Positions 4,104 to 50,430 of a DNA stretch of 64,000 nt are shown in pieces. The stretch spans positions 62,001 to 126,000 of the IMG/VR virus record IMGVR_UViG_3300010399_000031; one strand, written 5' to 3'. A model generated the notes under the pieces. It had not been told where the DNA came from. It saw only the letters and a list, made by a program, of their open reading frames with translations, and made no database searches. The first letter of the stretch is position 1, and every line of letters starts with the position of its first letter. Both the position numbers and the translations under genes were made by a program.

Positions 4104-4514
4104 ATGTCTACTCAATACCAGATCGGGAGTACCTACTCCTTTAGTGTCTATCCGGTCGCGCAGCTTGGTAACAACTTCCAAAACATCCAAGTATTGGCGT
4201 TACTAGACGCCACCACGGTGCAGCAACTCGGCGTTGACATCTGGGCGATGCACAAAAACATCTACCCGACGCTACCAGCAGGCACCCCCAACGACCCGAC
4301 ACAGTTCCAGTATCTGCGCATCAAACTCCAGTCCGGCACGAGCACCATTATCGCGATCCCCTGGATCAACGATTCGACGGTGGAACTCGTGAGTGCCCAG
4401 ACGCTTGACGTGAAGATTTACAACGTTGATCCGGCCACCTGGATTCCGCGCGTGCAACTGGCCTTAGCTCAACTCGGCCTGAATAACGTCCAAGTCTCAG
4501 TGTTCACTGGATAG
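4104..4514 (+). CDS. conserved phiKZ-like beta-rich protein, likely virion-associated
   Basis: 136-aa ORF with strong codon bias, in the position just before the DNA polymerase gene. Confidence 0.55.
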   Translation: MSTQYQIGSTYSFSVYPVAQLGNNFQNIQVLALLDATTVQQLGVDIWAMHKNIYPTLPAGTPNDPTQFQYLRIKLQSGTSTIIAIPWINDSTVELVSAQTLDVKIYNVDPATWIPRVQLALAQLGLNNVQVSVFTG

Positions 4515-4554
4515 GATGTGAGTGCTTGATCAACTAGATTTTTTTAGTGGATCG

Positions 4555-4900
4555 CATATTCTCTGAGAAGGTAAAGGGCGAAACGTGACTCGTCCGGTTT
4601 GCTGGTTCAACCCCGTGGGCAGTGCGGCACAGGGGGAGTAACTGGAACTTTGGTGCCGGGAACACCTTAGAGCGTCACGACCGCTGTACCCGCTGGTGCC
4701 ACCTTAATCGAGTTGGCTGCTTTCCTTGGTGGCGGACCCGATGCATCCCGTGTTAAGACTTCACTCATCTTGATCCGGCGTCAGAACGGGTGTGCACCAG
4801 CACCTTTTGGTGTACCCATGTGTCCAGCCTTTTGACATGTGGCGCTGTTTTGAGCATTTGGAACCTCGCAAATTAGGGGAGGGCTTTGGCTCTCCCCGCC
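4555..4900 (+). ncRNA. candidate structured non-coding RNA (unknown family)
   Basis: No convincing ORF; nested complementary segments (4584-4589/4674-4679, 4625-4630/4653-4658, 4692-4699/4794-4801, 4698-4703/4728-4733, 4736-4740/4787-4791); promoter-like sequence upstream, terminator downstream. Confidence 0.4.
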
Positions 4901-4916
4901 TTTTTCTTTTATGCCC
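4876..4916 (+). terminator. intrinsic terminator followed by TATGCC
   Basis: GGGGAGGGC-TTTG-GCTCTCCCC, then T-tract and TATGCC. Confidence 0.8.
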
Positions 4917-4990
4917 TTATTTTTTTTTTGTCGTTACTTTTCTAGCGAGCGTATCAATAGTACGAGTGAAGATCCCCCACGGAGTAAAAG

Positions 4991-7219
4991 ATGGAACTGA
5001 ATAACCCTTTTGTCCTGAAACCCGAGGCTTATAAGCGAGATATCGATATTTTGCGCCACTATGTTGATCAAGCAGCTACGTATCTTGTCATCATGACTGG
5101 GAAGAATTATGCCGAGTGCATCAACTATGTGAAAAAGCAATTGGGTAAGGGCGGGCGATTTGAGTTTCAAGATCGTAAGATCACCTACGCTGAGCGCGGG
5201 GATAATGGTGATCGAGAGTTGAAAGAGGGCCCACTCTCGTGGTTCTTGACCACCTCGGTAAAAGAACAAGATATTATCGCCCCCACATTCACGACGTACT
5301 TGCACCCGAAGAAAAAGAAGTCGCTCTTTGCCATCTATATTGCGCTGGGTAAAAAACGCCGCAATAAAGCTAAGCACGAAATGTTCACAGCAGAGATGGC
5401 GCGAGATGATGCATTGAAGGTCAACGATACCGTTACAGCTACGGCTCAAGATCGACTCTATGCGTTTAAGAAGGTGGAGCAAGTCTACGCCAAACAAAAG
5501 AACAACTCTCTCTCGGGCGGACACAACTCCACTTCCACCACGCTTATCAATAAGACCGCCCACTCGACACTGACCTCCATTTGTCGGGCAACGTCCGGCT
5601 ATGGTAATGCGAACAACGAAAAGTTTCTTGCTGGTAATCGCCATTACTGGTCGCCAATGATCGCGACGAATAACATCGTCTCCATCGTGCGACATACTGA
5701 CTACAAACAGTTGCAGGCGGTTATCGAGAAGTATCAGATGTATTTACCCACAGCGCAAGATGTAATCGACGTGATCGATTACTCTGCCAAGCACTACTGG
5801 GGTCCGCACTGGAAGAGTACTGCTACCCATACTCGCCTGATGGAGATAGCTGCTCGCCTCACCCCTCTTCAGCGTGCCGCCTTTGTCTATACGGGTGATC
5901 TGTATCACATCCGTCAGTACAATTCGGACTTTGTGCGCACCTTGGTGATGGGATTATCCAAACGGGTCGATGTCGAACACCCCAATCCTCAAGAAGTCTT
6001 TAAGCGTTGCTTCGATGATCAGCGTAATTTGGCAATTGTGATTTGCTCACACGTCACCAAGGGGATCGACCCGGATAAACTGAAGGACCATCCCCATCCG
6101 TACGCTGTGACTGCCTCGACGATCGAAAACATCTACACTACGCTAGAAGAGTACGAGGATTTTATCAAGACGTTTTTCGTCACCGAGAACATGCCTGCCT
6201 CGATGGCTTATTTTCCGGAATCTATCCGGCATACGGCCTTGATGTCGGATACGGACTCCACCATCTTTACCGCTCAGGAATGGGTCGATTGGGCGTTTGG
6301 TCGAATCGGATTTAGCGACGAGGAAAATAATCTTTCTTCCGCTATGATTTACATGGCGTCAGCTTCGATCACTCATGTGCTTGCCAGGATGTCAGCCAAC
6401 ATGGGCGTCGATACATCGATGATCCACCAGATCGCGATGAAGAACGAGTACAAGTTTGACATCTTTGTACCGACCAACGAAGCAAAGCATTACTTTGCTT
6501 TGATTTCCTCGCAAGAAGGAAAGGTGTACAATAAGTTGAAGGAAGAGATCAAAGGAGTACACCTGAAGAACTCGAATGTCAATAAGTACATCATGGGGGT
6601 GGCTAAAAAGACCATGATCGAATCGATGGAGACGATCATGCGTGGCGAGATGATCGATCTGAAAGCGTACTTAAAACAGTTCGCTGATATCGAGCGCAGT
6701 ATCAAAGAATCGATCGAAAAGGGTTCACACGACTTCTTTCGTTTTGGACGAGTCAATCAACTGTCTTCCTATAAGCGCAAAGAAGATAAAGAAAAAGGTT
6801 GGATCGAACCTGAACATGATTGGATGGCAAGAACTCCCTATCGTTTTTACTTGCTCTGGAAAGAGGTCTTTGCACCATTTTACGGTGATGTGCCAGAGCC
6901 ACCCTATACGTGTTTGAAACTGTCATCAAATCTCGATACGATGGGTAAAACCAAGGAGTGGTTGGCGTCGATAGAGAACCGGGAGTTGGCTGATCGATTG
7001 ACCGAGTGGATGAAGAAGTACAAAAAGTCGTACCTTGGCATGGTGATGTTACCTGAGCAGATCGTGGCGATGCGCGGTATTCCGCCCGAATTGCTCAAGG
7101 TGGTTGATATACGCAACATGATCGTGGAGTCAACAGCGGTCTTCTATAAGCTGAGCGAAGCGTATGGCGTGTACATGCTTAACGATAAGAGAACTAAACT
7201 TTTTTTGGACTACTACTGA
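4991..7219 (+). CDS. family B DNA polymerase, polymerase-domain subunit (phiKZ gp50-like)
   Basis: Motif B AKQKNNSLSG and motif C LMSDTDSTIF; lacks exonuclease and motif A, which lie in 45002-46765. Confidence 0.88.
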   Translation: MELNNPFVLKPEAYKRDIDILRHYVDQAATYLVIMTGKNYAECINYVKKQLGKGGRFEFQDRKITYAERGDNGDRELKEGPLSWFLTTSVKEQDIIAPTFTTYLHPKKKKSLFAIYIALGKKRRNKAKHEMFTAEMARDDALKVNDTVTATAQDRLYAFKKVEQVYAKQKNNSLSGGHNSTSTTLINKTAHSTLTSICRATSGYGNANNEKFLAGNRHYWSPMIATNNIVSIVRHTDYKQLQAVIEKYQMYLPTAQDVIDVIDYSAKHYWGPHWKSTATHTRLMEIAARLTPLQRAAFVYTGDLYHIRQYNSDFVRTLVMGLSKRVDVEHPNPQEVFKRCFDDQRNLAIVICSHVTKGIDPDKLKDHPHPYAVTASTIENIYTTLEEYEDFIKTFFVTENMPASMAYFPESIRHTALMSDTDSTIFTAQEWVDWAFGRIGFSDEENNLSSAMIYMASASITHVLARMSANMGVDTSMIHQIAMKNEYKFDIFVPTNEAKHYFALISSQEGKVYNKLKEEIKGVHLKNSNVNKYIMGVAKKTMIESMETIMRGEMIDLKAYLKQFADIERSIKESIEKGSHDFFRFGRVNQLSSYKRKEDKEKGWIEPEHDWMARTPYRFYLLWKEVFAPFYGDVPEPPYTCLKLSSNLDTMGKTKEWLASIENRELADRLTEWMKKYKKSYLGMVMLPEQIVAMRGIPPELLKVVDIRNMIVESTAVFYKLSEAYGVYMLNDKRTKLFLDYY

Positions 7220-7374
7220 TGAAACTAGGAATCATTGGTATTTATCTGGGAGTGATGGTTTTCTTCATTGCAATGGCCATCGGTGTCCTCGTGAGAAAAC
7301 CCTCCAAACGTTTTCCCGATCCCCCACCCGGTTATTACGAGTGGCTTAACAAAACCAACAAACCGAGGCAATGA
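7219..7374 (+). CDS. small membrane protein (51 aa)
   Basis: Read by eye: MKLGIIGIYLGVMVFFIAMAIGVLVRK..., ATG overlaps the polymerase stop (TGATG). Confidence 0.6.
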   Translation: MKLGIIGIYLGVMVFFIAMAIGVLVRKPSKRFPDPPPGYYEWLNKTNKPRQ

Positions 7375-25524: not shown

Positions 25525-25627
25525 GGAAGTATCCTTCAAGAAGAAATGTAAGAATTTTGAATCACATATCATCAAGAGAGTAGTGAAAACTACTCGGAAT
25601 TGAATTAATCTTTCCTCAAAGGAAAAT

Positions 25628-26854: not shown

Positions 26855-28136
26855 ATTTAGTAAAAGTTCGTCCGTCCTTGTAAAAAGGAGGATGAAATGG
26901 GAATTCGAGTTATTCCTGGTTATGAAACTTACGGCGTTACAAAGGCTGGAATAGTTGTTTCGTTTGAGAGTGGAACGATCCTGAGGCGATACTTGTTTGA
27001 TGGTTATATCTACGTAGATCTTTTTAAAGAAACGATAAAACCATTACGAGTACATCGACTAGTTGCATTAGCGTGGGTTGTGAATCCTAATCCAAACCGG
27101 TTTACCATTGTCAATCATCGCGATGGTATTCGGATAAACAATTGGTGGGAAAATCTTGAGTGGACTGATTACTCAGGTAACAATTATCACGCTATTAACG
27201 CAGGACTGAGGTCTGATAACATTCGCTGTTGTGTAAGAGATTTTTACACAAAGCAAGTGCATGAATTTGCTTCAATGGCGCAAGCCAAGGAATTCATGGG
27301 ACTTCGTAAAGACGTTCGAGTTGAACAACTCTCACTCAAGCAATTTGGAGCACTTATCGAGGGTCGATTTGAGTTCCGATTTGCAAACGATTCGACACCG
27401 TGGTTTTATGAAAATCGCACTGAGCTGGTTCCGCCATCCCGATATATGGTGGTGGTTCTAGAACCAAACGGCGAAACTAGAGAAGTATATTCGAATCGAG
27501 ATTTGCTTCAACGCTATCAACTTTATCGTAGCTCGAGCAGATCTATCCCTGGATTAGTCGATTACGGAAATTCATTATATCCGGATCATGAGTTTAGTTA
27601 TCGAGACAGTTACGCGGAGGAACAACACCGTGTGTCCCGAAATATAAAAAGTCAGGCTCAACCCATTCTTGCGGTACGTGGTGTCGAAGAGCTTGATTTT
27701 CAATCACTGACTCAATGTGCTAATCATTTTGATGTCGATCGTTCAGTTATTGTTCTTCGGTTAAATAGTGGACAAGATTTGGACGGATGGACTTTTACTT
27801 CAATGCCTCTTTAATCAGTAATGATTAAAGAAATCTCCTTTAATTGCTGGAAACTCCTGTTAGACGTGTGTACCACTGCGAGCCGCGAGGCAAAGCGACG
27901 GTTTGAAAAACACACGGTAGGGACAATCAGCAGCGAAGCTTCTCTTACGAGAAGAACGTTCAACGACTAAGACCTTACCAGTCTGTAGAGCCAAGCGGTA
28001 GGCGTATAGCCTTTAAATCGAAATAGGGAGCTTCCTACTTGAAAAAGAGGAAGAAGATATAGTCTGCTCCGTATGGAAACATACGGCGGGTGCTTTAACG
28101 CACCGGCTCAGCGTAGCGAACTGAGTGGACATTAGG
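26855..28136 (+). mobile_element. group I intron (1282 nt) in RNAP beta gene
   Basis: P AATTGCTGGAAA 27842, Q AATCAGCAG 27925, R GTTCAACGACTA 27958, S AAGATATAGTCT 28054; exon 1 ends in U, intron ends in G; splicing restores CHGG-KGVICKI. Confidence 0.9.
26897..27814 (+). CDS. intron-encoded HNH homing endonuclease
   Basis: VHRLVALAW...VNHRDGIRINNWWENLEW; AT-rich; AAGGAGG upstream. Confidence 0.9.
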   Translation: MGIRVIPGYETYGVTKAGIVVSFESGTILRRYLFDGYIYVDLFKETIKPLRVHRLVALAWVVNPNPNRFTIVNHRDGIRINNWWENLEWTDYSGNNYHAINAGLRSDNIRCCVRDFYTKQVHEFASMAQAKEFMGLRKDVRVEQLSLKQFGALIEGRFEFRFANDSTPWFYENRTELVPPSRYMVVVLEPNGETREVYSNRDLLQRYQLYRSSSRSIPGLVDYGNSLYPDHEFSYRDSYAEEQHRVSRNIKSQAQPILAVRGVEELDFQSLTQCANHFDVDRSVIVLRLNSGQDLDGWTFTSMPL

Positions 28137-34157: not shown

Positions 34158-34180
34158 AGATTTTTTCAGCTATATATAAC
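34158..34180 (+). promoter_or_regulatory. early-promoter-like element
   Basis: AGATTTTTTCAGCTATATATAAC, similar to 11885-11904. Confidence 0.6.
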
Positions 34181-48682: not shown

Positions 48683-50430
48683 TGTTCGCAGTCAACCTTA
48701 ATGGGGACGACGAGTTCGACCACCCGGACGTCGTCCTTATCGAAACCGTGGGCGCCGCGCAAGCGCCAGACTGGCATCCCGATGAGGAAATGGTCGCTGC
48801 ACTTGAGGCCCAATTCCTCGACCTTCAGTACTTGTTACAAGACATGTTCAAAGAAGGCGGGATGAATCAACAACTGGCCATGGAGGCGCACCGGGTGCTG
48901 CCGGAAATGGCTGAGAAGTATCCGTTGGGGTACTTCACCAAACAAACCACCGCCACGCTTTATAAGCCTGCTTTAGAAGAGTTGCATGCAGGTGTCTGGG
49001 CGTTAATCGGGGCAGCCTCACTGGCTATTGCAGCTATCATCTGGAAGTTTGTGCGCTGGGTGGTGCGCAAATGGAAGGGAGAACCCGCTGGTGCCGGCGC
49101 AGGCGGCTCTAGTTCCAGTGATGGTCGTCCGTCGGACTCCGAGATCGATCGGGAGATCAAAGAGGCCACGACTGCGGCAGAGCAAAAGATCGAGCAAAAC
49201 GATGCTGCGGTTGAGCAGATGCGTGAGCTTGAATCGGTGCAAAAGGAAGCGGTTTCCAAAGTTGAAGACGAGTTGCGTAAAGTGCGCACTTCGACCAAGG
49301 ATGAAATCGCCAAAGAAAAGGGTGACTTGACGAGTGAAGATCTGACTTCATTCGAGTCAGCCTCCGAGACGCTTGTCGAGCGTCATGCACCGGGGCGTTT
49401 TACGCACCTCATCGACCAATCGCGTAATGCCTGGTTTGACATCGTGCAAGATGGTCGTTGGACCAAATTGATGCTCTCGCTCGCCCCTGTGCTCTCCTCC
49501 ATCGAGCAGCAACTCGTGCAGCGTGTGCAAACGTTTGAGTCGATTTTCTCGGTGACGCAAACGCAAGGTGATCCGGTGCGCCATAAAACCGCGATGGACA
49601 TCATTGCAAGCGTCAAGGAGCCGATCAAACTGCCCGGTGAGTACCAAGACCTGCATCAGCTCTCGCGCATGCTCGATAAGCCTGATCACTTGATGGCTTT
49701 TAACGCAGGCAAGAAGAAACTCGAACCTGTGGTCGCCGGGGAAAAGCTTGCTGCTTTGATGGCCTCCTCCCAGTATAAGGCGCTACTCGAAGTGCGGGTG
49801 CGTTTCATCGAAAAACTGGGGATGCTACACAAACAGCAGATCAAATTGGGGGAAATCTCCAATCGATGGAATGCTGCTCACCCCGGTCAAGGTATTGGCA
49901 TGGGGGTACCGCAAGACATCTCGGAAGCCATGGCTCCGGCCATTACGCTGCTCAAACGTGAACTTGTGTACATGATGCTTGTGAACACGGCGATCGAAAC
50001 GTTCTTGGACGAAATCGATCGGTTCAATTTGACATTGGCCAACTGGTGGTCGGTGGCGTGGAGAGCGTTTGAGCACTACGCGGCGAACACCAAAGTACCC
50101 GAAGGTGCTCCGAAGATCGAGATGCCGGTGGAAGTGCAAAAAGCACAAGGTATCTTGACACTTTTGCGTCGTGCGATGGGTAAAGTTCCGGCGTCCGACT
50201 TGGGTCAGAGCTTGGCTCACTTGCCGGGTCACGCCAAGAACGCGGCAGCTAGTGCAGCGCACAAACTTAGCCAAGCCGCAGGTAAAGCCGTACAAGCGGG
50301 TGCCGCTAAACCGGCAGGTCAGGTGGCCGAACCTAAGGGTGCATCGGGACCCGCAGGAAACCGCCAGATTCCAACGAATCAGTGGCAAAACGCTTCAACC
50401 AAACCGAAGAAGGGCGGCTCTCAAGTCTAG
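48682..50430 (+). CDS. virion head protein with cleavable acidic propeptide (phiKZ gp86 position)
   Basis: ALE/AME sites in acidic N-terminus followed by a hydrophobic helix. Confidence 0.7.
   Translation: MFAVNLNGDDEFDHPDVVLIETVGAAQAPDWHPDEEMVAALEAQFLDLQYLLQDMFKEGGMNQQLAMEAHRVLPEMAEKYPLGYFTKQTTATLYKPALEELHAGVWALIGAASLAIAAIIWKFVRWVVRKWKGEPAGAGAGGSSSSDGRPSDSEIDREIKEATTAAEQKIEQNDAAVEQMRELESVQKEAVSKVEDELRKVRTSTKDEIAKEKGDLTSEDLTSFESASETLVERHAPGRFTHLIDQSRNAWFDIVQDGRWTKLMLSLAPVLSSIEQQLVQRVQTFESIFSVTQTQGDPVRHKTAMDIIASVKEPIKLPGEYQDLHQLSRMLDKPDHLMAFNAGKKKLEPVVAGEKLAALMASSQYKALLEVRVRFIEKLGMLHKQQIKLGEISNRWNAAHPGQGIGMGVPQDISEAMAPAITLLKRELVYMMLVNTAIETFLDEIDRFNLTLANWWSVAWRAFEHYAANTKVPEGAPKIEMPVEVQKAQGILTLLRRAMGKVPASDLGQSLAHLPGHAKNAAASAAHKLSQAAGKAVQAGAAKPAGQVAEPKGASGPAGNRQIPTNQWQNASTKPKKGGSQV

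What the first reader, a model, noticed from the sequence alone, without database searches (positions are those of the whole stretch)
4531..4916. Candidate ~340-nt structured non-coding RNA with its own promoter and terminator, next to the DNA polymerase gene
Seen: this is the largest ORF-free gap in an otherwise densely packed window. It starts with AGATTTTTTTAGTGGATCGCATATTC (4536-4561), which resembles the promoter-like elements at 25551-25572 and 34158-34180, and ends at a strong terminator (4876-4910). Complementary pairs form two nested domains: CGTGAC/GTCACG enclosing CGGCAC/GTGCCG, and GCTGGTGC/GCACCAGC enclosing GCCACC/GGTGGC and ACCCG/CGGGT, some mutually exclusive (switch-like). I recognise no Rfam family. 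Inference: a phage-specific large ncRNA (scaffold for nucleus/RNA export, 6S-like RNAP decoy, or replication primer), or a structured replication origin.
Basis: partly seen in the sequence, partly recalled or inferred. Interest (0 to 1): 0.72.

Follow-up and report, generated by a model that had tools for sequence, protein, structure and literature searches.

The report
New structured RNA gene beside phage polymerase
The gap upstream of the DNA polymerase gene of this soil jumbo phage holds a real non-coding RNA gene of about 245-350 nt, matching no described RNA family, whose pseudoknotted fold is kept by compensatory mutations in at least 19 related phages; its function is still unknown.

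Summary
Window 4515-4990 is the largest ORF-free gap. It lies between a phiKZ-gp49-like gene (PF20287) and the DNA polymerase C-subunit gene (PF20286) of a 243-kb chimallivirus from soil metagenomes.

All 12 fetched relatives with 52-77% identical polymerase keep a homologous non-coding segment here. It starts with a conserved promoter-like element and ends in a phiKZ-type intrinsic terminator.

The RNA core (window 4564-4808) has two domains:
- A 5' domain with hairpin Pa, whose loop forms a pseudoknot, plus hairpins H2 and H3.
- A 3' three-way junction: long helix P2 enclosing H4 (UUCCUU loop) and H5 (near-invariant CUCACUCA loop).

Covariation is strong. Domain 1 is 93% paired, 18 of 25 pairs show double changes, and 0 of 500 shuffles reach this. 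A domain-1 covariance model also finds more distant chimalliviruses (E 1e-6 to 1e-3).

There is no Rfam match, no conserved ORF and only one copy in the genome. No RNA-seq run was listed, so transcription is inferred.

Function is unresolved. I favour a trans-acting RNA that uses its pyrimidine-rich loops, possibly on the polymerase mRNA leader (about 0.3). A protein-binding scaffold is about equally likely. Leader and primer readings are less likely.

The parts
4104..4514 (+). Upstream gene (context): homolog of phiKZ gp49, Pfam PF20287 'SH3DP'
   Evidence: Pfam E 1e-35. It matches PDB chains named PHIKZ049. phiKZ gp49 forms a hexagonal ring of the baseplate (PMC13250141). No terminator lies between its stop codon and the RNA.
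4539..4561 (+). Promoter-like element: T run 4539-4545, then a -10-like CATATTC at 4555-4561
   Evidence: Kept in all 14 close homologs as TTTTTTA, 12-13 nt, CATnWTGTG, then AGAGAAGG. It fits the published description of phiKZ early promoters, a T-rich motif upstream of -19 plus an extended -10 (PMC8244752). It is not a frequent motif in this genome. Its function as a promoter is inferred.
4564..4808 (+). Conserved RNA core (about 245 nt), two domains
   Evidence: Covariance model R1 matches 4564-4679 at 90.8 bits, E about 1e-21. Domain 2 folds to the same architecture in all 14 homologs. Stop codons occur in all six frames in 12 of the 14 homologs.
4576..4595 (+). Hairpin Pa (GGGCGA 4576-4581 with UCGUCC 4590-4595); its loop holds the 5' strand of the pseudoknot
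   Evidence: 100% of cells paired in 19 sequences, with C-G to U-A exchanges (helix 1).
4584..4589 (+). Pseudoknot, 5' strand (CGUGAC), pairs with 4674-4679
   Evidence: 85% of cells paired and 4 of 6 pairs have changes on both sides. The pseudoknot was not part of the model that made the alignment (helix 2).
4602..4645 (+). Hairpin H2: outer stem 4602-4608 with 4638-4645, inner stem 4611-4617 with 4628-4635
   Evidence: 95% paired and 10 of 11 pairs have changes on both sides, for example U-A in 7 sequences against C-G in 10 at one pair (helix 3).
4652..4666 (+). Hairpin H3 with a G-rich loop (GGGUA in most relatives, CCGGGAA here)
   Evidence: 95% paired and 3 of 4 pairs have changes on both sides (helix 4).
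4674..4679 (+). Pseudoknot, 3' strand (GUCACG)
   Evidence: See the 5' strand at 4584-4589.
4692..4703 (+). P2 long-range helix, 5' strand (GCUGGUGCCACC)
   Evidence: It pairs with 4789-4801. A helix of 12-17 bp forms at the same place in 12 of 14 independent folds, from very different sequences. In the 8-sequence sub-clade it is 100% paired, with 6 of 13 pairs changed on both sides.
4707..4742 (+). Hairpin H4, variable stem, pyrimidine-rich loop UUUCCUU at 4721-4727
   Evidence: Folds. Loops of the UUCCUU, CCUCCUU or UUCUUC type occur in most homologs and in the distant groups. H4 is absent in L066.
4748..4778 (+). Hairpin H5 with the near-invariant loop CUUCACUCA at 4759-4767
   Evidence: CACUC is invariant in 14 sequences. 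The stem covaries, with 6 of 7 pairs changed on both sides (helix 2).
4789..4801 (+). P2, 3' strand (GGUGUGCACCAGC), followed by ACC and a short U tract
   Evidence: A U-rich tract follows P2 in most homologs.
4802..4875 (+). Variable 3' tail, not conserved in sequence or length
   Evidence: Alignments. The tail runs from about 8 nt (L066) to about 110 nt (L068).
4876..4915 (+). Intrinsic terminator: 9-bp G+C-rich hairpin at 4876-4897, a T tract, and TTTTATGCC at 4907-4915
   Evidence: Terminator scan. The stem covaries with L028. The hairpin plus TTAT(G)..GT tail is the conserved phiKZ terminator motif (PMC10914365), and the same tail follows the RNA in relatives.
4920..4971 (+). Promoter-like element of the polymerase gene: T10 at 4920-4929 and ATCAATAGTACGAGTGAAG at 4953-4971
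   Evidence: 17 nt are identical in L028 although the flanks differ. Related TACGAG or CTGAGTG boxes stand before the polymerase gene in the other clades. Function is inferred.
4964..4971 (+). Candidate pairing site GAGUGAAG for the H5 loop (8 bp), 28 nt before the start codon
   Evidence: Duplex of -12.7 to -13.2 kcal/mol, better than 99.3% of windows in the local 12 kb. However, about 0.9% of all genome windows do as well.
4991..7219 (+). Downstream gene (context): divergent family B DNA polymerase, homolog of phiKZ gp50 (the DNAP-C subunit)
   Evidence: Pfam PF20286, E 1e-219. gp50 is one half of the split phiKZ polymerase (PMC13648687).

Best explanation
Window 4539-4915 is a single-copy gene for a structured non-coding RNA of a family not described before.

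Shown:
- A segment homologous to 4564-4808 lies at the same place, between the gp49-like gene and the DNA polymerase C-subunit gene, in every fetched relative. None of them has a conserved reading frame there.
- A two-domain fold is maintained by compensatory substitutions. The first domain has hairpin Pa, whose loop makes a pseudoknot, plus H2 and H3. The second has long helix P2 enclosing H4 and H5.
- G-U pairs and folding energy favour the + strand.

Inferred:
- The RNA is transcribed from its own promoter-like element (T run plus a -10-like box, resembling phiKZ early promoters).
- It ends at the U tract after P2 or at the strong terminator at 4876-4915. That would give a discrete RNA of about 245-350 nt which is not part of the polymerase mRNA.

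Most likely mode of action (about 0.3): it acts in trans as a folded RNA that displays invariant single-stranded pyrimidine-rich loops (H5 CUCACUCA, H4 UUCCUU). These would pair with purine-rich mRNA leaders. The first candidate is the leader of the adjacent polymerase mRNA (GAGUGAAG at 4964-4971), which would tune the timing or level of polymerase synthesis.

My confidence that this is a genuine structured RNA gene is about 0.9. The confidence figure below blends that with the weaker mechanism.
For: - Synteny and conservation: all 12 loci fetched through polymerase homologs of 52-77% identity have an ORF-free or nearly ORF-free gap of 320-640 bp holding the same element.
- Homology search: covariance model R1 scores the 14 training sequences at E 1e-13 to 1e-27. 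Outside its training set it finds L017, L027 and L007 (E about 1e-6) and L008 and L015 (1e-4 to 1e-3), always upstream of the polymerase gene.
- Covariation, domain 1: 93.4% of cells paired against 38-59% with partners slid; 18 of 25 pairs have double changes; 0 of 500 shuffles reach the observed values. The pseudoknot, which was not in the model, is 85% paired with 4 of 6 pairs covarying (MAFFT-only version).
- Covariation, domain 2 (8 sequences): 96.9% paired, 12 of 20 pairs with double changes. P2 and H5 appear in independent folds of nearly all 14 sequences (P2 in 12, H5 in all), with different sequences.
- Not coding: stops in all frames in most homologs, no conserved start codon, and substitutions at first and second codon positions.
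- Boundaries: the promoter-like element is kept in all 14. The terminator is found by the scan and carries the family's TTTATGCC tail.
- Strand: -91.3 kcal/mol on + against -78.5 on -.
- Pairing idea: the H5 loop makes 8 bp with 4964-4971 in the window and 9 bp in L057. Two positions are exchanged compensatorily (U-A to C-G, C-G to G-C). Own loop-leader pairs beat shuffled partners, permutation p = 0.03.
Against: - No transcript evidence: no RNA run was listed, and the DNA runs show only identical sequence.
- No terminator separates the upstream gene from the RNA, so read-through from that gene is possible.
- The promoter-like motif is rare in this genome and its class is unknown.
- The pairing hypothesis is weak. 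L028, L062 and L067 pair poorly with their own leaders.
- About 0.9% of all 40-nt windows of the genome pair as well as the polymerase leader does.
- GAG at the site is probably fixed by the polymerase promoter or start site, since TACGAG recurs in distant clades.
- A pseudoknotted fold with conserved junction nucleotides is more typical of ligand- or protein-binding RNAs than of simple base-pairing sRNAs.
- The core's thermodynamic z-score is only -0.76.
Confidence: 0.6

Rival explanations
1. It is a protein-binding scaffold or decoy RNA. The folded core binds a phage or host protein through its invariant loops and junctions (CUCACUCA, GGGUA, CCGGAUUGC, GAGUA...GAAC). It would work as part of a ribonucleoprotein or as a sponge, not by base pairing.
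For: - The pseudoknot, three-way junction and many invariant unpaired nucleotides resemble other large orphan structured RNAs.
- The H5 loop is invariant although the candidate mRNA sites vary.
- The candidate mRNA site is not unique in the genome.
Against: - No partner is identifiable.
- The neighbouring gp49-like protein, once suspected of binding nucleic acid, is a baseplate ring protein in phiKZ.
- There are no repeated protein-binding motifs of the CsrB or RsmZ kind.
Confidence: 0.3
2. It is a cis-acting leader of the polymerase gene, either a riboswitch-like or protein-dependent attenuator or a '5'UTR-derived' RNA made by premature termination. Transcription starts at 4564, and conditional read-through of the terminators sets polymerase expression.
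For: - It is on the same strand, directly upstream, with a terminator between.
- P2 followed by a U tract looks like an aptamer-closing helix doubling as a terminator.
- Premature-termination RNAs in 5'UTRs are common in phiKZ (17 candidates) and 201phi2-1 (PMC10914365, PMC11512511).
- phiKZ and PS119XW have a short conserved hairpin-plus-T-run element at the same place.
Against: - A second, very strong terminator follows (4876-4915).
- A conserved promoter-like box lies between that terminator and the start codon.
- The spacer between P2 and the terminator varies from 8 to 110 nt, with no conserved anti-terminator.
- In L061 and L064 a small ORF and another terminator separate the RNA from the polymerase gene, and in L027 about 0.5 kb does.
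Confidence: 0.18
3. It is a replication element. Either the transcript primes DNA synthesis, as ColE1 RNA II or T7 and T4 origin transcripts do, in a phage family with no known primase, or the DNA itself is a structured origin.
For: - Chimalliviruses lack an identified primase but carry an RNase H bound to the polymerase, and priming by the phage RNA polymerases has been proposed (PMC7824862, PMC13648687).
- The element sits next to the polymerase gene.
Against: - Compensatory changes that include G-U pairs valid on one strand only point to RNA structure, not DNA.
- A strong terminator releases the RNA.
- There are no iterons, no AT-rich unwinding element and no G-rich hybrid-forming run.
- Cumulative GC skew has no turning point here.
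- phiKZ, PS119XW, 201phi2-1 and the Xanthomonas phage RTH11 gave no domain-1 match.
Confidence: 0.06
4. It is only the 3' untranslated end of the upstream baseplate-gene transcript, a stabilising structure plus terminator between a late and a middle transcription unit, with no activity of its own.
For: - No terminator lies between 4514 and the RNA.
- The locus is a boundary between a structural gene and a replication gene.
Against: - A protective 3' end does not need 245 nt with a pseudoknot, invariant loops and junctions kept across polymerase identities down to about 41-44%.
- The promoter-like element is conserved right after the stop codon.
- phiKZ manages this boundary with a plain terminator.
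Confidence: 0.06

Closest known systems
5'UTR-derived and intergenic ncRNA candidates of phiKZ and 201phi2-1 found by ONT-cappable-seq (Putzeys et al. 2024, PMC10914365; PMC11512511)
   Same: They are phage-encoded in the same virus family, delimited by a phage promoter and a phiKZ-type terminator (hairpin plus a TTATG..GT tail). They are often placed just upstream of a conserved gene and conserved by position across genera.
   Different: Those RNAs are under 250 nt, mostly simple hairpins. None is reported upstream of gp50, and none has covariation-supported tertiary structure. phiKZ and 201phi2-1 themselves give no match to the domain-1 model.
Large orphan structured bacterial and phage RNAs (GOLLD, ROOL, OLE, raiA, HEARO) in Rfam
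   Same: They have a large multi-helix fold with pseudoknot and junction, strong covariation and an unknown biochemical role. GOLLD and ROOL are often phage-borne. That last point is from my own knowledge.
   Different: There is no sequence or structure match to any of 4227 Rfam models at E up to 10 or at gathering score in 8 homologs. The size, architecture and genomic context differ.
Trans-acting base-pairing sRNAs with a Rho-independent terminator, including 'cis-neighbour' regulators
   Same: It has its own promoter, a terminator hairpin with a U tail, a conserved single-stranded segment complementary to an mRNA leader, and pyrimidine-rich loops able to pair with Shine-Dalgarno-like sequences.
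   Different: It is much larger and more intricately folded. The candidate seed sits in a 9-nt hairpin loop. Target complementarity is only partly conserved and is not unique in the genome.
T4/RB69 gp43 translational operator (DNA polymerase autoregulation through an RNA hairpin in its own leader)
   Same: It is an RNA element tied to expression of a phage family B DNA polymerase gene.
   Different: The operator is a hairpin of about 36 nt overlapping the ribosome-binding site of the same mRNA. That figure is from my own knowledge. Here the element is a separate, terminated 245-nt RNA upstream of the leader.
ColE1 RNA II and phage origin transcripts (primer RNAs)
   Same: It is a structured transcript of a few hundred nt near replication functions, in a system that has RNase H and lacks a known primase.
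   Different: There is no evidence of a persistent RNA-DNA hybrid, an origin or a skew change. The RNA is released by a terminator.

Membership tests
Any Rfam 15 family (4227 models) | Score at or above the family's gathering threshold | tested here: not met
   The best match in 4300-5200 is 19.5 bits (suhB, threshold 41) and covers only the terminator. Nothing was found in 8 homologous loci. As a positive control, the same search of the whole window finds a group I intron at 27785-28086 with 92 bits.
Group I intron or other self-splicing element | A match to the catalytic core model, and interruption of a reading frame that is restored by excision | tested here: not met
   There is no Intron_gpI match here. 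The flanking genes are separate genes in all chimalliviruses examined.
6S RNA (RNA polymerase decoy) | A long, largely double-stranded rod with a central open-promoter-like bubble | tested here: not met
   The covariation-supported fold is a pseudoknotted domain plus a three-way junction. No 6S model matched.
Riboswitch or transcription attenuator | A conserved sensor domain directly coupled to mutually exclusive terminator and anti-terminator pairing that controls the downstream ORF | tested here: not met
   A sensor-like domain is present. However, the spacer to the terminator varies from 8 to 110 nt with no conserved alternative pairing. A promoter-like box follows the terminator, and other DNA intervenes in L061, L064 and L027.
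Riboswitch or transcription attenuator | Ligand or factor binding that changes read-through | not testable with these tools
   This needs in-line probing or transcription assays.
Base-pairing regulatory sRNA | Independent transcription unit with an intrinsic terminator | tested here: inconclusive
   A promoter-like element and a terminator are conserved, but no transcript data were available.
Base-pairing regulatory sRNA | A conserved unpaired seed with conserved, covarying complementarity to a target mRNA | tested here: inconclusive
   The H5 loop is invariant. Complementarity to the polymerase leader is good in the window and L057, with compensatory changes, and the permutation p is 0.03. 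It is poor in 3 of 14 homologs and not unique in the genome.
phiKZ-type intrinsic terminator | A G+C-rich hairpin followed by a T tract containing TTAT(G)..GT | tested here: met
   The hairpin is at 4876-4897 and TTTTATGCC at 4907-4915. The published consensus is in PMC10914365. Relatives read TTTATGCCGT.
phiKZ-type early (virion RNA polymerase) promoter | A T-rich motif upstream of -19 plus an extended -10 box; activity with the virion polymerase | tested here: inconclusive
   The sequence pattern fits the description (PMC8244752). The motif is not recurrent in this genome, and activity cannot be tested here.
Primer RNA or replication origin | An RNA-DNA junction or replication start at the locus; a strand-compositional switch | tested here: not met
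   There is no turning point in cumulative GC skew at genome position 66.5 kb. RNA-DNA junctions cannot be tested with these tools.
Protein-coding gene or pseudogene | A conserved open frame with codon-like substitution pattern | tested here: not met
   Stops occur in all six frames in most homologs. There is no conserved start codon, and changes are paired between helix strands rather than three-periodic.

The most novel reading that the evidence does not exclude
The RNA is a working part of the chimallivirus replication apparatus. It would be a dedicated primer or initiator RNA, or an RNA subunit acting with the split DNA polymerase and its RNase H-clamp partner. That would explain how these phages start DNA synthesis without any recognisable primase, at least in this clade.
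Probability: 0.06. Interest if true: 0.95.

Novelty: new variant of a known kind. Interest (0 to 1): 0.7.

Why it matters
- Nucleus-forming jumbo phages are a main model for viral compartmentalisation and for escape from bacterial immunity. Their RNA biology is almost unexplored. Published candidates are short and lack supported structures.
- This is a large RNA with a pseudoknot and a three-way junction, supported by compensatory evolution. It is fixed at one locus beside the polymerase gene across polymerase identities down to about 41-44%.
- That degree of constraint implies an important function. The element gives a defined target for antisense knock-down, structure probing and pull-down experiments.
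- It touches open questions about how these phages time or prime replication.
- It also adds a candidate family for Rfam, and it shows that the 'empty' gaps at this locus in many uncultivated chimalliviruses are genes.

Tried and rejected
- blastn of the gap and of two distant groups' gaps against 50,697 phage records found no homolog.
- RNA-seq runs: none was listed. DNA contigs from four runs show the same phage, identical here apart from one T fewer in the T10 run in one of them, so they add no variation.
- Sequence-only profiles (nhmmer) do not link the clades. Only the covariance model does.
- An exact motif scan of IMG/VR with GCTGGTTCAACCC...GGGGGAGTA found only the two known relatives.
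- A looser 14-base pattern gave 119 or more hits. Of those, 99 were re-scored with R1 and none matched.
- The domain-2 model R2 is weak outside its sub-clade. It places L058 and L067 exactly and the window nearly on my P2 coordinates, but the E-values are not significant.
- The idea that the neighbouring 'SH3DP' protein binds this RNA was dropped. Its phiKZ homolog is a baseplate ring protein.
- A small ORF starting at the AUG in the Pa loop was rejected. The start is not conserved and the substitutions are not codon-like.
- GAGTGA is not a general promoter or start-site motif of this genome: 34 copies of TGAGTGA, about the number expected by chance.
- A kissing contact between the H2 apical loop and the H5 loop was rejected, because the H2 loop is not conserved in L061 and L064.
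- An origin of replication inferred from GC skew is not supported.
- A second R1 match in the genome, at 50247-50363, is not significant.
Full report
**Where the finding lies.** The window is bases 62001-126000 of a 243,403-bp virus record. The ORF at 4104-4514 matches Pfam PF20287 ('SH3DP', E 1e-35). The ORF at 4991-7219 matches PF20286, the divergent family B DNA polymerase (E 1e-219). This gene pair is typical of phiKZ-like, nucleus-forming jumbo phages (chimalliviruses). The DNA occurs in soil and rhizosphere metagenome runs. No cultivated phage is close: the best tblastn identity of the 136-aa protein is 43%, and blastn of the gap finds nothing.

**Checking the observation.**
- With ORFs of 60 aa or more on either strand, 4515-4791 is the largest uncovered stretch of the window. 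With 100 aa or more, 4515-4933 is the largest internal one.
- ARAGORN finds no tRNA in the window.
- Rfam gives only sub-threshold matches to the terminator hairpin.
- The 386-nt interval folds better than shuffles (z = -2.85). This is mostly due to the terminator, because the 245-nt core has z = -0.76.
- Energy alone would therefore not carry the claim.

**Relatives.**
- A polymerase-based scan of IMG/VR and JGI metagenomes gave one sister lineage (L004, L028, L041; 77% identity). Its gap aligns with conserved blocks and visible compensatory changes.
- A search of the 5.8-billion-protein collection then gave polymerase homologs of 52-77% identity. I fetched 12 of them with flanks.
- All 12 have the gp49-like gene, a gap of 320-640 bp and the polymerase gene. 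All 12 gaps contain the same element.
- In L061 and L064 a small unannotated ORF (87 and 66 aa, no Pfam match) and a second terminator lie between the element and the polymerase gene.

**Anatomy in window coordinates.**
- *Promoter-like element:* T run 4539-4545 and CATATTC 4555-4561. In the 14 sequences this reads TTTTTTA, 12-13 nt, CATnWTGTG, then AGAGAAGG.
- *Likely 5' end:* a purine-rich GAGAAGGUAAAGGG at 4565-4578.
- *Pa:* 4576-4581 with 4590-4595.
- *Pseudoknot:* the Pa loop CGUGAC (4584-4589) with GUCACG (4674-4679).
- *H2:* 4602-4608 with 4638-4645, and 4611-4617 with 4628-4635.
- *H3:* 4652-4666.
- *P2:* 4692-4703 with 4789-4801. It encloses H4 (4707-4742, loop UUUCCUU) and H5 (4748-4778, loop CUUCACUCA).
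- *3' end:* a short U tract, a non-conserved tail to 4875, the terminator hairpin at 4876-4897, and a T tract with TTTTATGCC at 4907-4915.
- The hairpin-plus-TTATG tail is the conserved terminator motif reported for 61 phiKZ terminators (PMC10914365).

**Is the structure real?**
- On the plain MAFFT alignment of domain 1 (14 sequences), 92% of cells pair. With partners slid, 41-56% pair. Sixteen of 25 pairs have changes on both sides, and no shuffle out of 500 reaches the observed values.
- I built a covariance model of domain 1 without the pseudoknot (R1). It retrieved the 14 sequences and also L017, L027 and L007 (E about 1e-6) and L008 and L015 (1e-4 to 1e-3). All of these lie upstream of polymerase genes only 41-44% identical to the window's.
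- On the resulting 19-sequence alignment, 93.4% of cells pair and 18 of 25 pairs have double changes. The pseudoknot, which the model could not favour, is 85% paired with 4 of 6 pairs covarying, including A-U to G-C in the distant group.
- Domain 2 diverges faster. Each of the 14 sequences folded on its own gives the same architecture, with P2 built from quite different sequences.
- In the 8-sequence sub-clade, 96.9% of cells pair and 12 of 20 pairs have double changes.
- Several conserved pairs are G-U, and the + strand folds 13 kcal/mol better than the - strand. The structure therefore belongs to a + strand RNA.

Of the five helices, two are real: the pseudoknot and P2. GCCACC/GGTGGC is an alternative that the family does not use. 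CGGCAC/GTGCCG and ACCCG/CGGGT are not conserved. The apparent mutual exclusivity is a hairpin loop pairing at a distance, that is, a pseudoknot.

**Not coding, single copy, no known family.**
- Stops interrupt all six frames in most homologs.
- The AUG inside the Pa loop is absent from the window, L028, L057 and L063. Substitutions fall on first and second codon positions but are paired across helices.
- R1 finds one significant copy in the genome.
- Rfam finds nothing in 8 homologous loci. It does find a group I intron elsewhere in the window, which serves as a control.

**Wider distribution.**
- Many chimalliviruses with polymerase identities of 40-45% have 430-610-bp gaps at this locus.
- One set (L008, L015, L042, with L005 linked by sequence) is homologous by R1 and by eye. 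It shares GGUAAGGGCG...CGUCCGGAUUGC, and its pseudoknot pairs UGGCU with AGCCA.
- Another set (L012, L013, L014, L021) has its own strongly covarying two-domain RNA with a similar promoter-like start. R1 does not match it, so homology is open.
- phiKZ, PS119XW, 201phi2-1 and the Xanthomonas phage RTH11 give no match. Burkholderia phage FLC9 gives a weak but correctly placed one (E 3.6). Erwinia phage pEa_SNUABM_54 and Ralstonia phage FLC1-1B give only weak matches (E 4-9) outside the gap.
- phiKZ and PS119XW have only about 200 bp here, with a short conserved hairpin and T run.

**Context from the literature.**
- phiKZ gp49, the homolog of the upstream gene, forms a hexagonal ring of the baseplate (PMC13250141). 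The Pfam name is therefore misleading, and the locus is a border between a structural gene and a replication gene.
- gp50 is the C-terminal half of a split polymerase that works with an RNase H-clamp protein. No primase is known in this family (PMC13648687, PMC7824862).
[quoted passage not shown] I found no report of one at this locus, and the supplementary tables were not available.

**How it may work.** A strong terminator follows the RNA, and a conserved promoter-like box lies between that terminator and the start codon. Other DNA intervenes in some relatives. All this argues that the RNA is a discrete product rather than the polymerase leader. Its most constrained unpaired parts are the H5 loop (CACUC invariant), the H3 loop, the junction CCGGAUUGC and the pyrimidine-rich H4 loop.

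Evidence for pairing between the H5 loop and the polymerase leader:
- In the window the H5 loop can make 8 bp with GAGUGAAG (4964-4971), 28 nt before the polymerase start codon. In L057 it makes 9 bp with GAGUGGACC at the same distance. Two positions are changed on both sides.
- Across the 14 phages, own loop-leader pairs are better than mismatched ones (p = 0.03).

Weaknesses of that idea:
- Three phages pair poorly with their own leaders.
- About 0.9% of all genome windows pair as well.
- The GAG of the site is probably dictated by the promoter, since TACGAG recurs in distant clades.

I therefore give the base-pairing mechanism about 0.3. A protein-binding scaffold or decoy gets about 0.3, a cis leader about 0.18, a primer or origin about 0.06, and a mere 3' end about 0.06.

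**Verdict.** This is a genuine, strongly constrained, previously undescribed structured RNA gene of a clade of nucleus-forming jumbo phages. Transcription and function remain to be shown.

Noticed in passing
window 27785-28086 (+): Group I catalytic intron, Rfam RF00028, 92.2 bits, E 2e-22. It coincides with the second-largest ORF-free stretch of the window (27815-28012). I did not examine which gene it interrupts.
   Followed up: partly
window 4104-4514: The Pfam family is named 'SH3 fold domain associated with phage DNA polymerases'. In phiKZ it is gp49, which forms a hexagonal ring of the baseplate in the 2026 cryo-EM atlas. The PDB holds chains named PHIKZ049. The family name therefore suggests the wrong role.
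   Followed up: yes
L012:3528-3940, L013:3563-3950, L014:3535-3945, L021:3563-3950: A second structured RNA lies at the same locus in another chimallivirus group. RNAalifold finds 36 pairs with compensatory changes, and the RNA has a similar T-run promoter-like start and terminator. The domain-1 model does not match it, so it may be a very divergent homolog or an analogue.
   Followed up: partly
L072:2903-3438 (Burkholderia phage FLC9) and L070:2888-3230 (Xanthomonas phage RTH11): These cultivated phages have 536-bp and 343-bp unannotated gaps between the gp49-like gene and the polymerase gene. FLC9 starts with ...TGAAGAGAAGGGC, as this family does, and gives a weak match at the right place. 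It is a possible experimental system.
   Followed up: partly
L061:744-1007 and L064:1187-1387: Small ORFs (87 and 66 aa, no Pfam match) are inserted between the RNA and the polymerase gene in two relatives. There the RNA is followed only by P2 plus a T7 run before the ORF.
   Followed up: partly
L027:3425-3990: About 0.5 kb of extra DNA lies between the RNA's terminator and the polymerase gene. It holds a 145-aa ORF on the opposite strand that is unrelated to 201phi2-1 gp82, which occupies the same position in that phage. The sister contig L007 lacks the insertion.
   Followed up: partly
whole genome, e.g. window 13974, 16188, 25141, 34844: Terminators of this phage follow a pattern: a G+C-rich hairpin, then TTC, T7-10 and GTC. 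Many also carry GGCATAAA just upstream of the hairpin. That is the reverse complement of the TTTATGCC tail, so these sites look bidirectional.
   Followed up: no
window 7336-7343 and 4961-4968: The box TACGAGTG that precedes the polymerase gene recurs before the next gene downstream of it (..GGTTATTACGAGTGG..). It may be a shared promoter or start-site element. The 8-mer is not enriched genome-wide (10 copies).
   Followed up: partly
genome 50247-50363 (outside the window, L193:1501-1617): There is a weak second match to the domain-1 model (18.8 bits, E 0.02-0.07). It is probably chance.
   Followed up: partly
window 4920-4929: A 244,013-bp contig from a 2023 soil run carries this locus with no substitutions but with T9 instead of T10. 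The same phage was thus sampled six years apart with an unchanged RNA gene.
   Followed up: yes
L001:4394-4594 (phiKZ) and L003:4385-4565 (PS119XW): In the short gap of these phages, a conserved hairpin (..CATCA..TGATGTGCTACC.CTCAAT..) is followed by a second hairpin with a T run, just before the polymerase gene. This may be one of the premature-termination leader RNAs reported for phiKZ.
   Followed up: no
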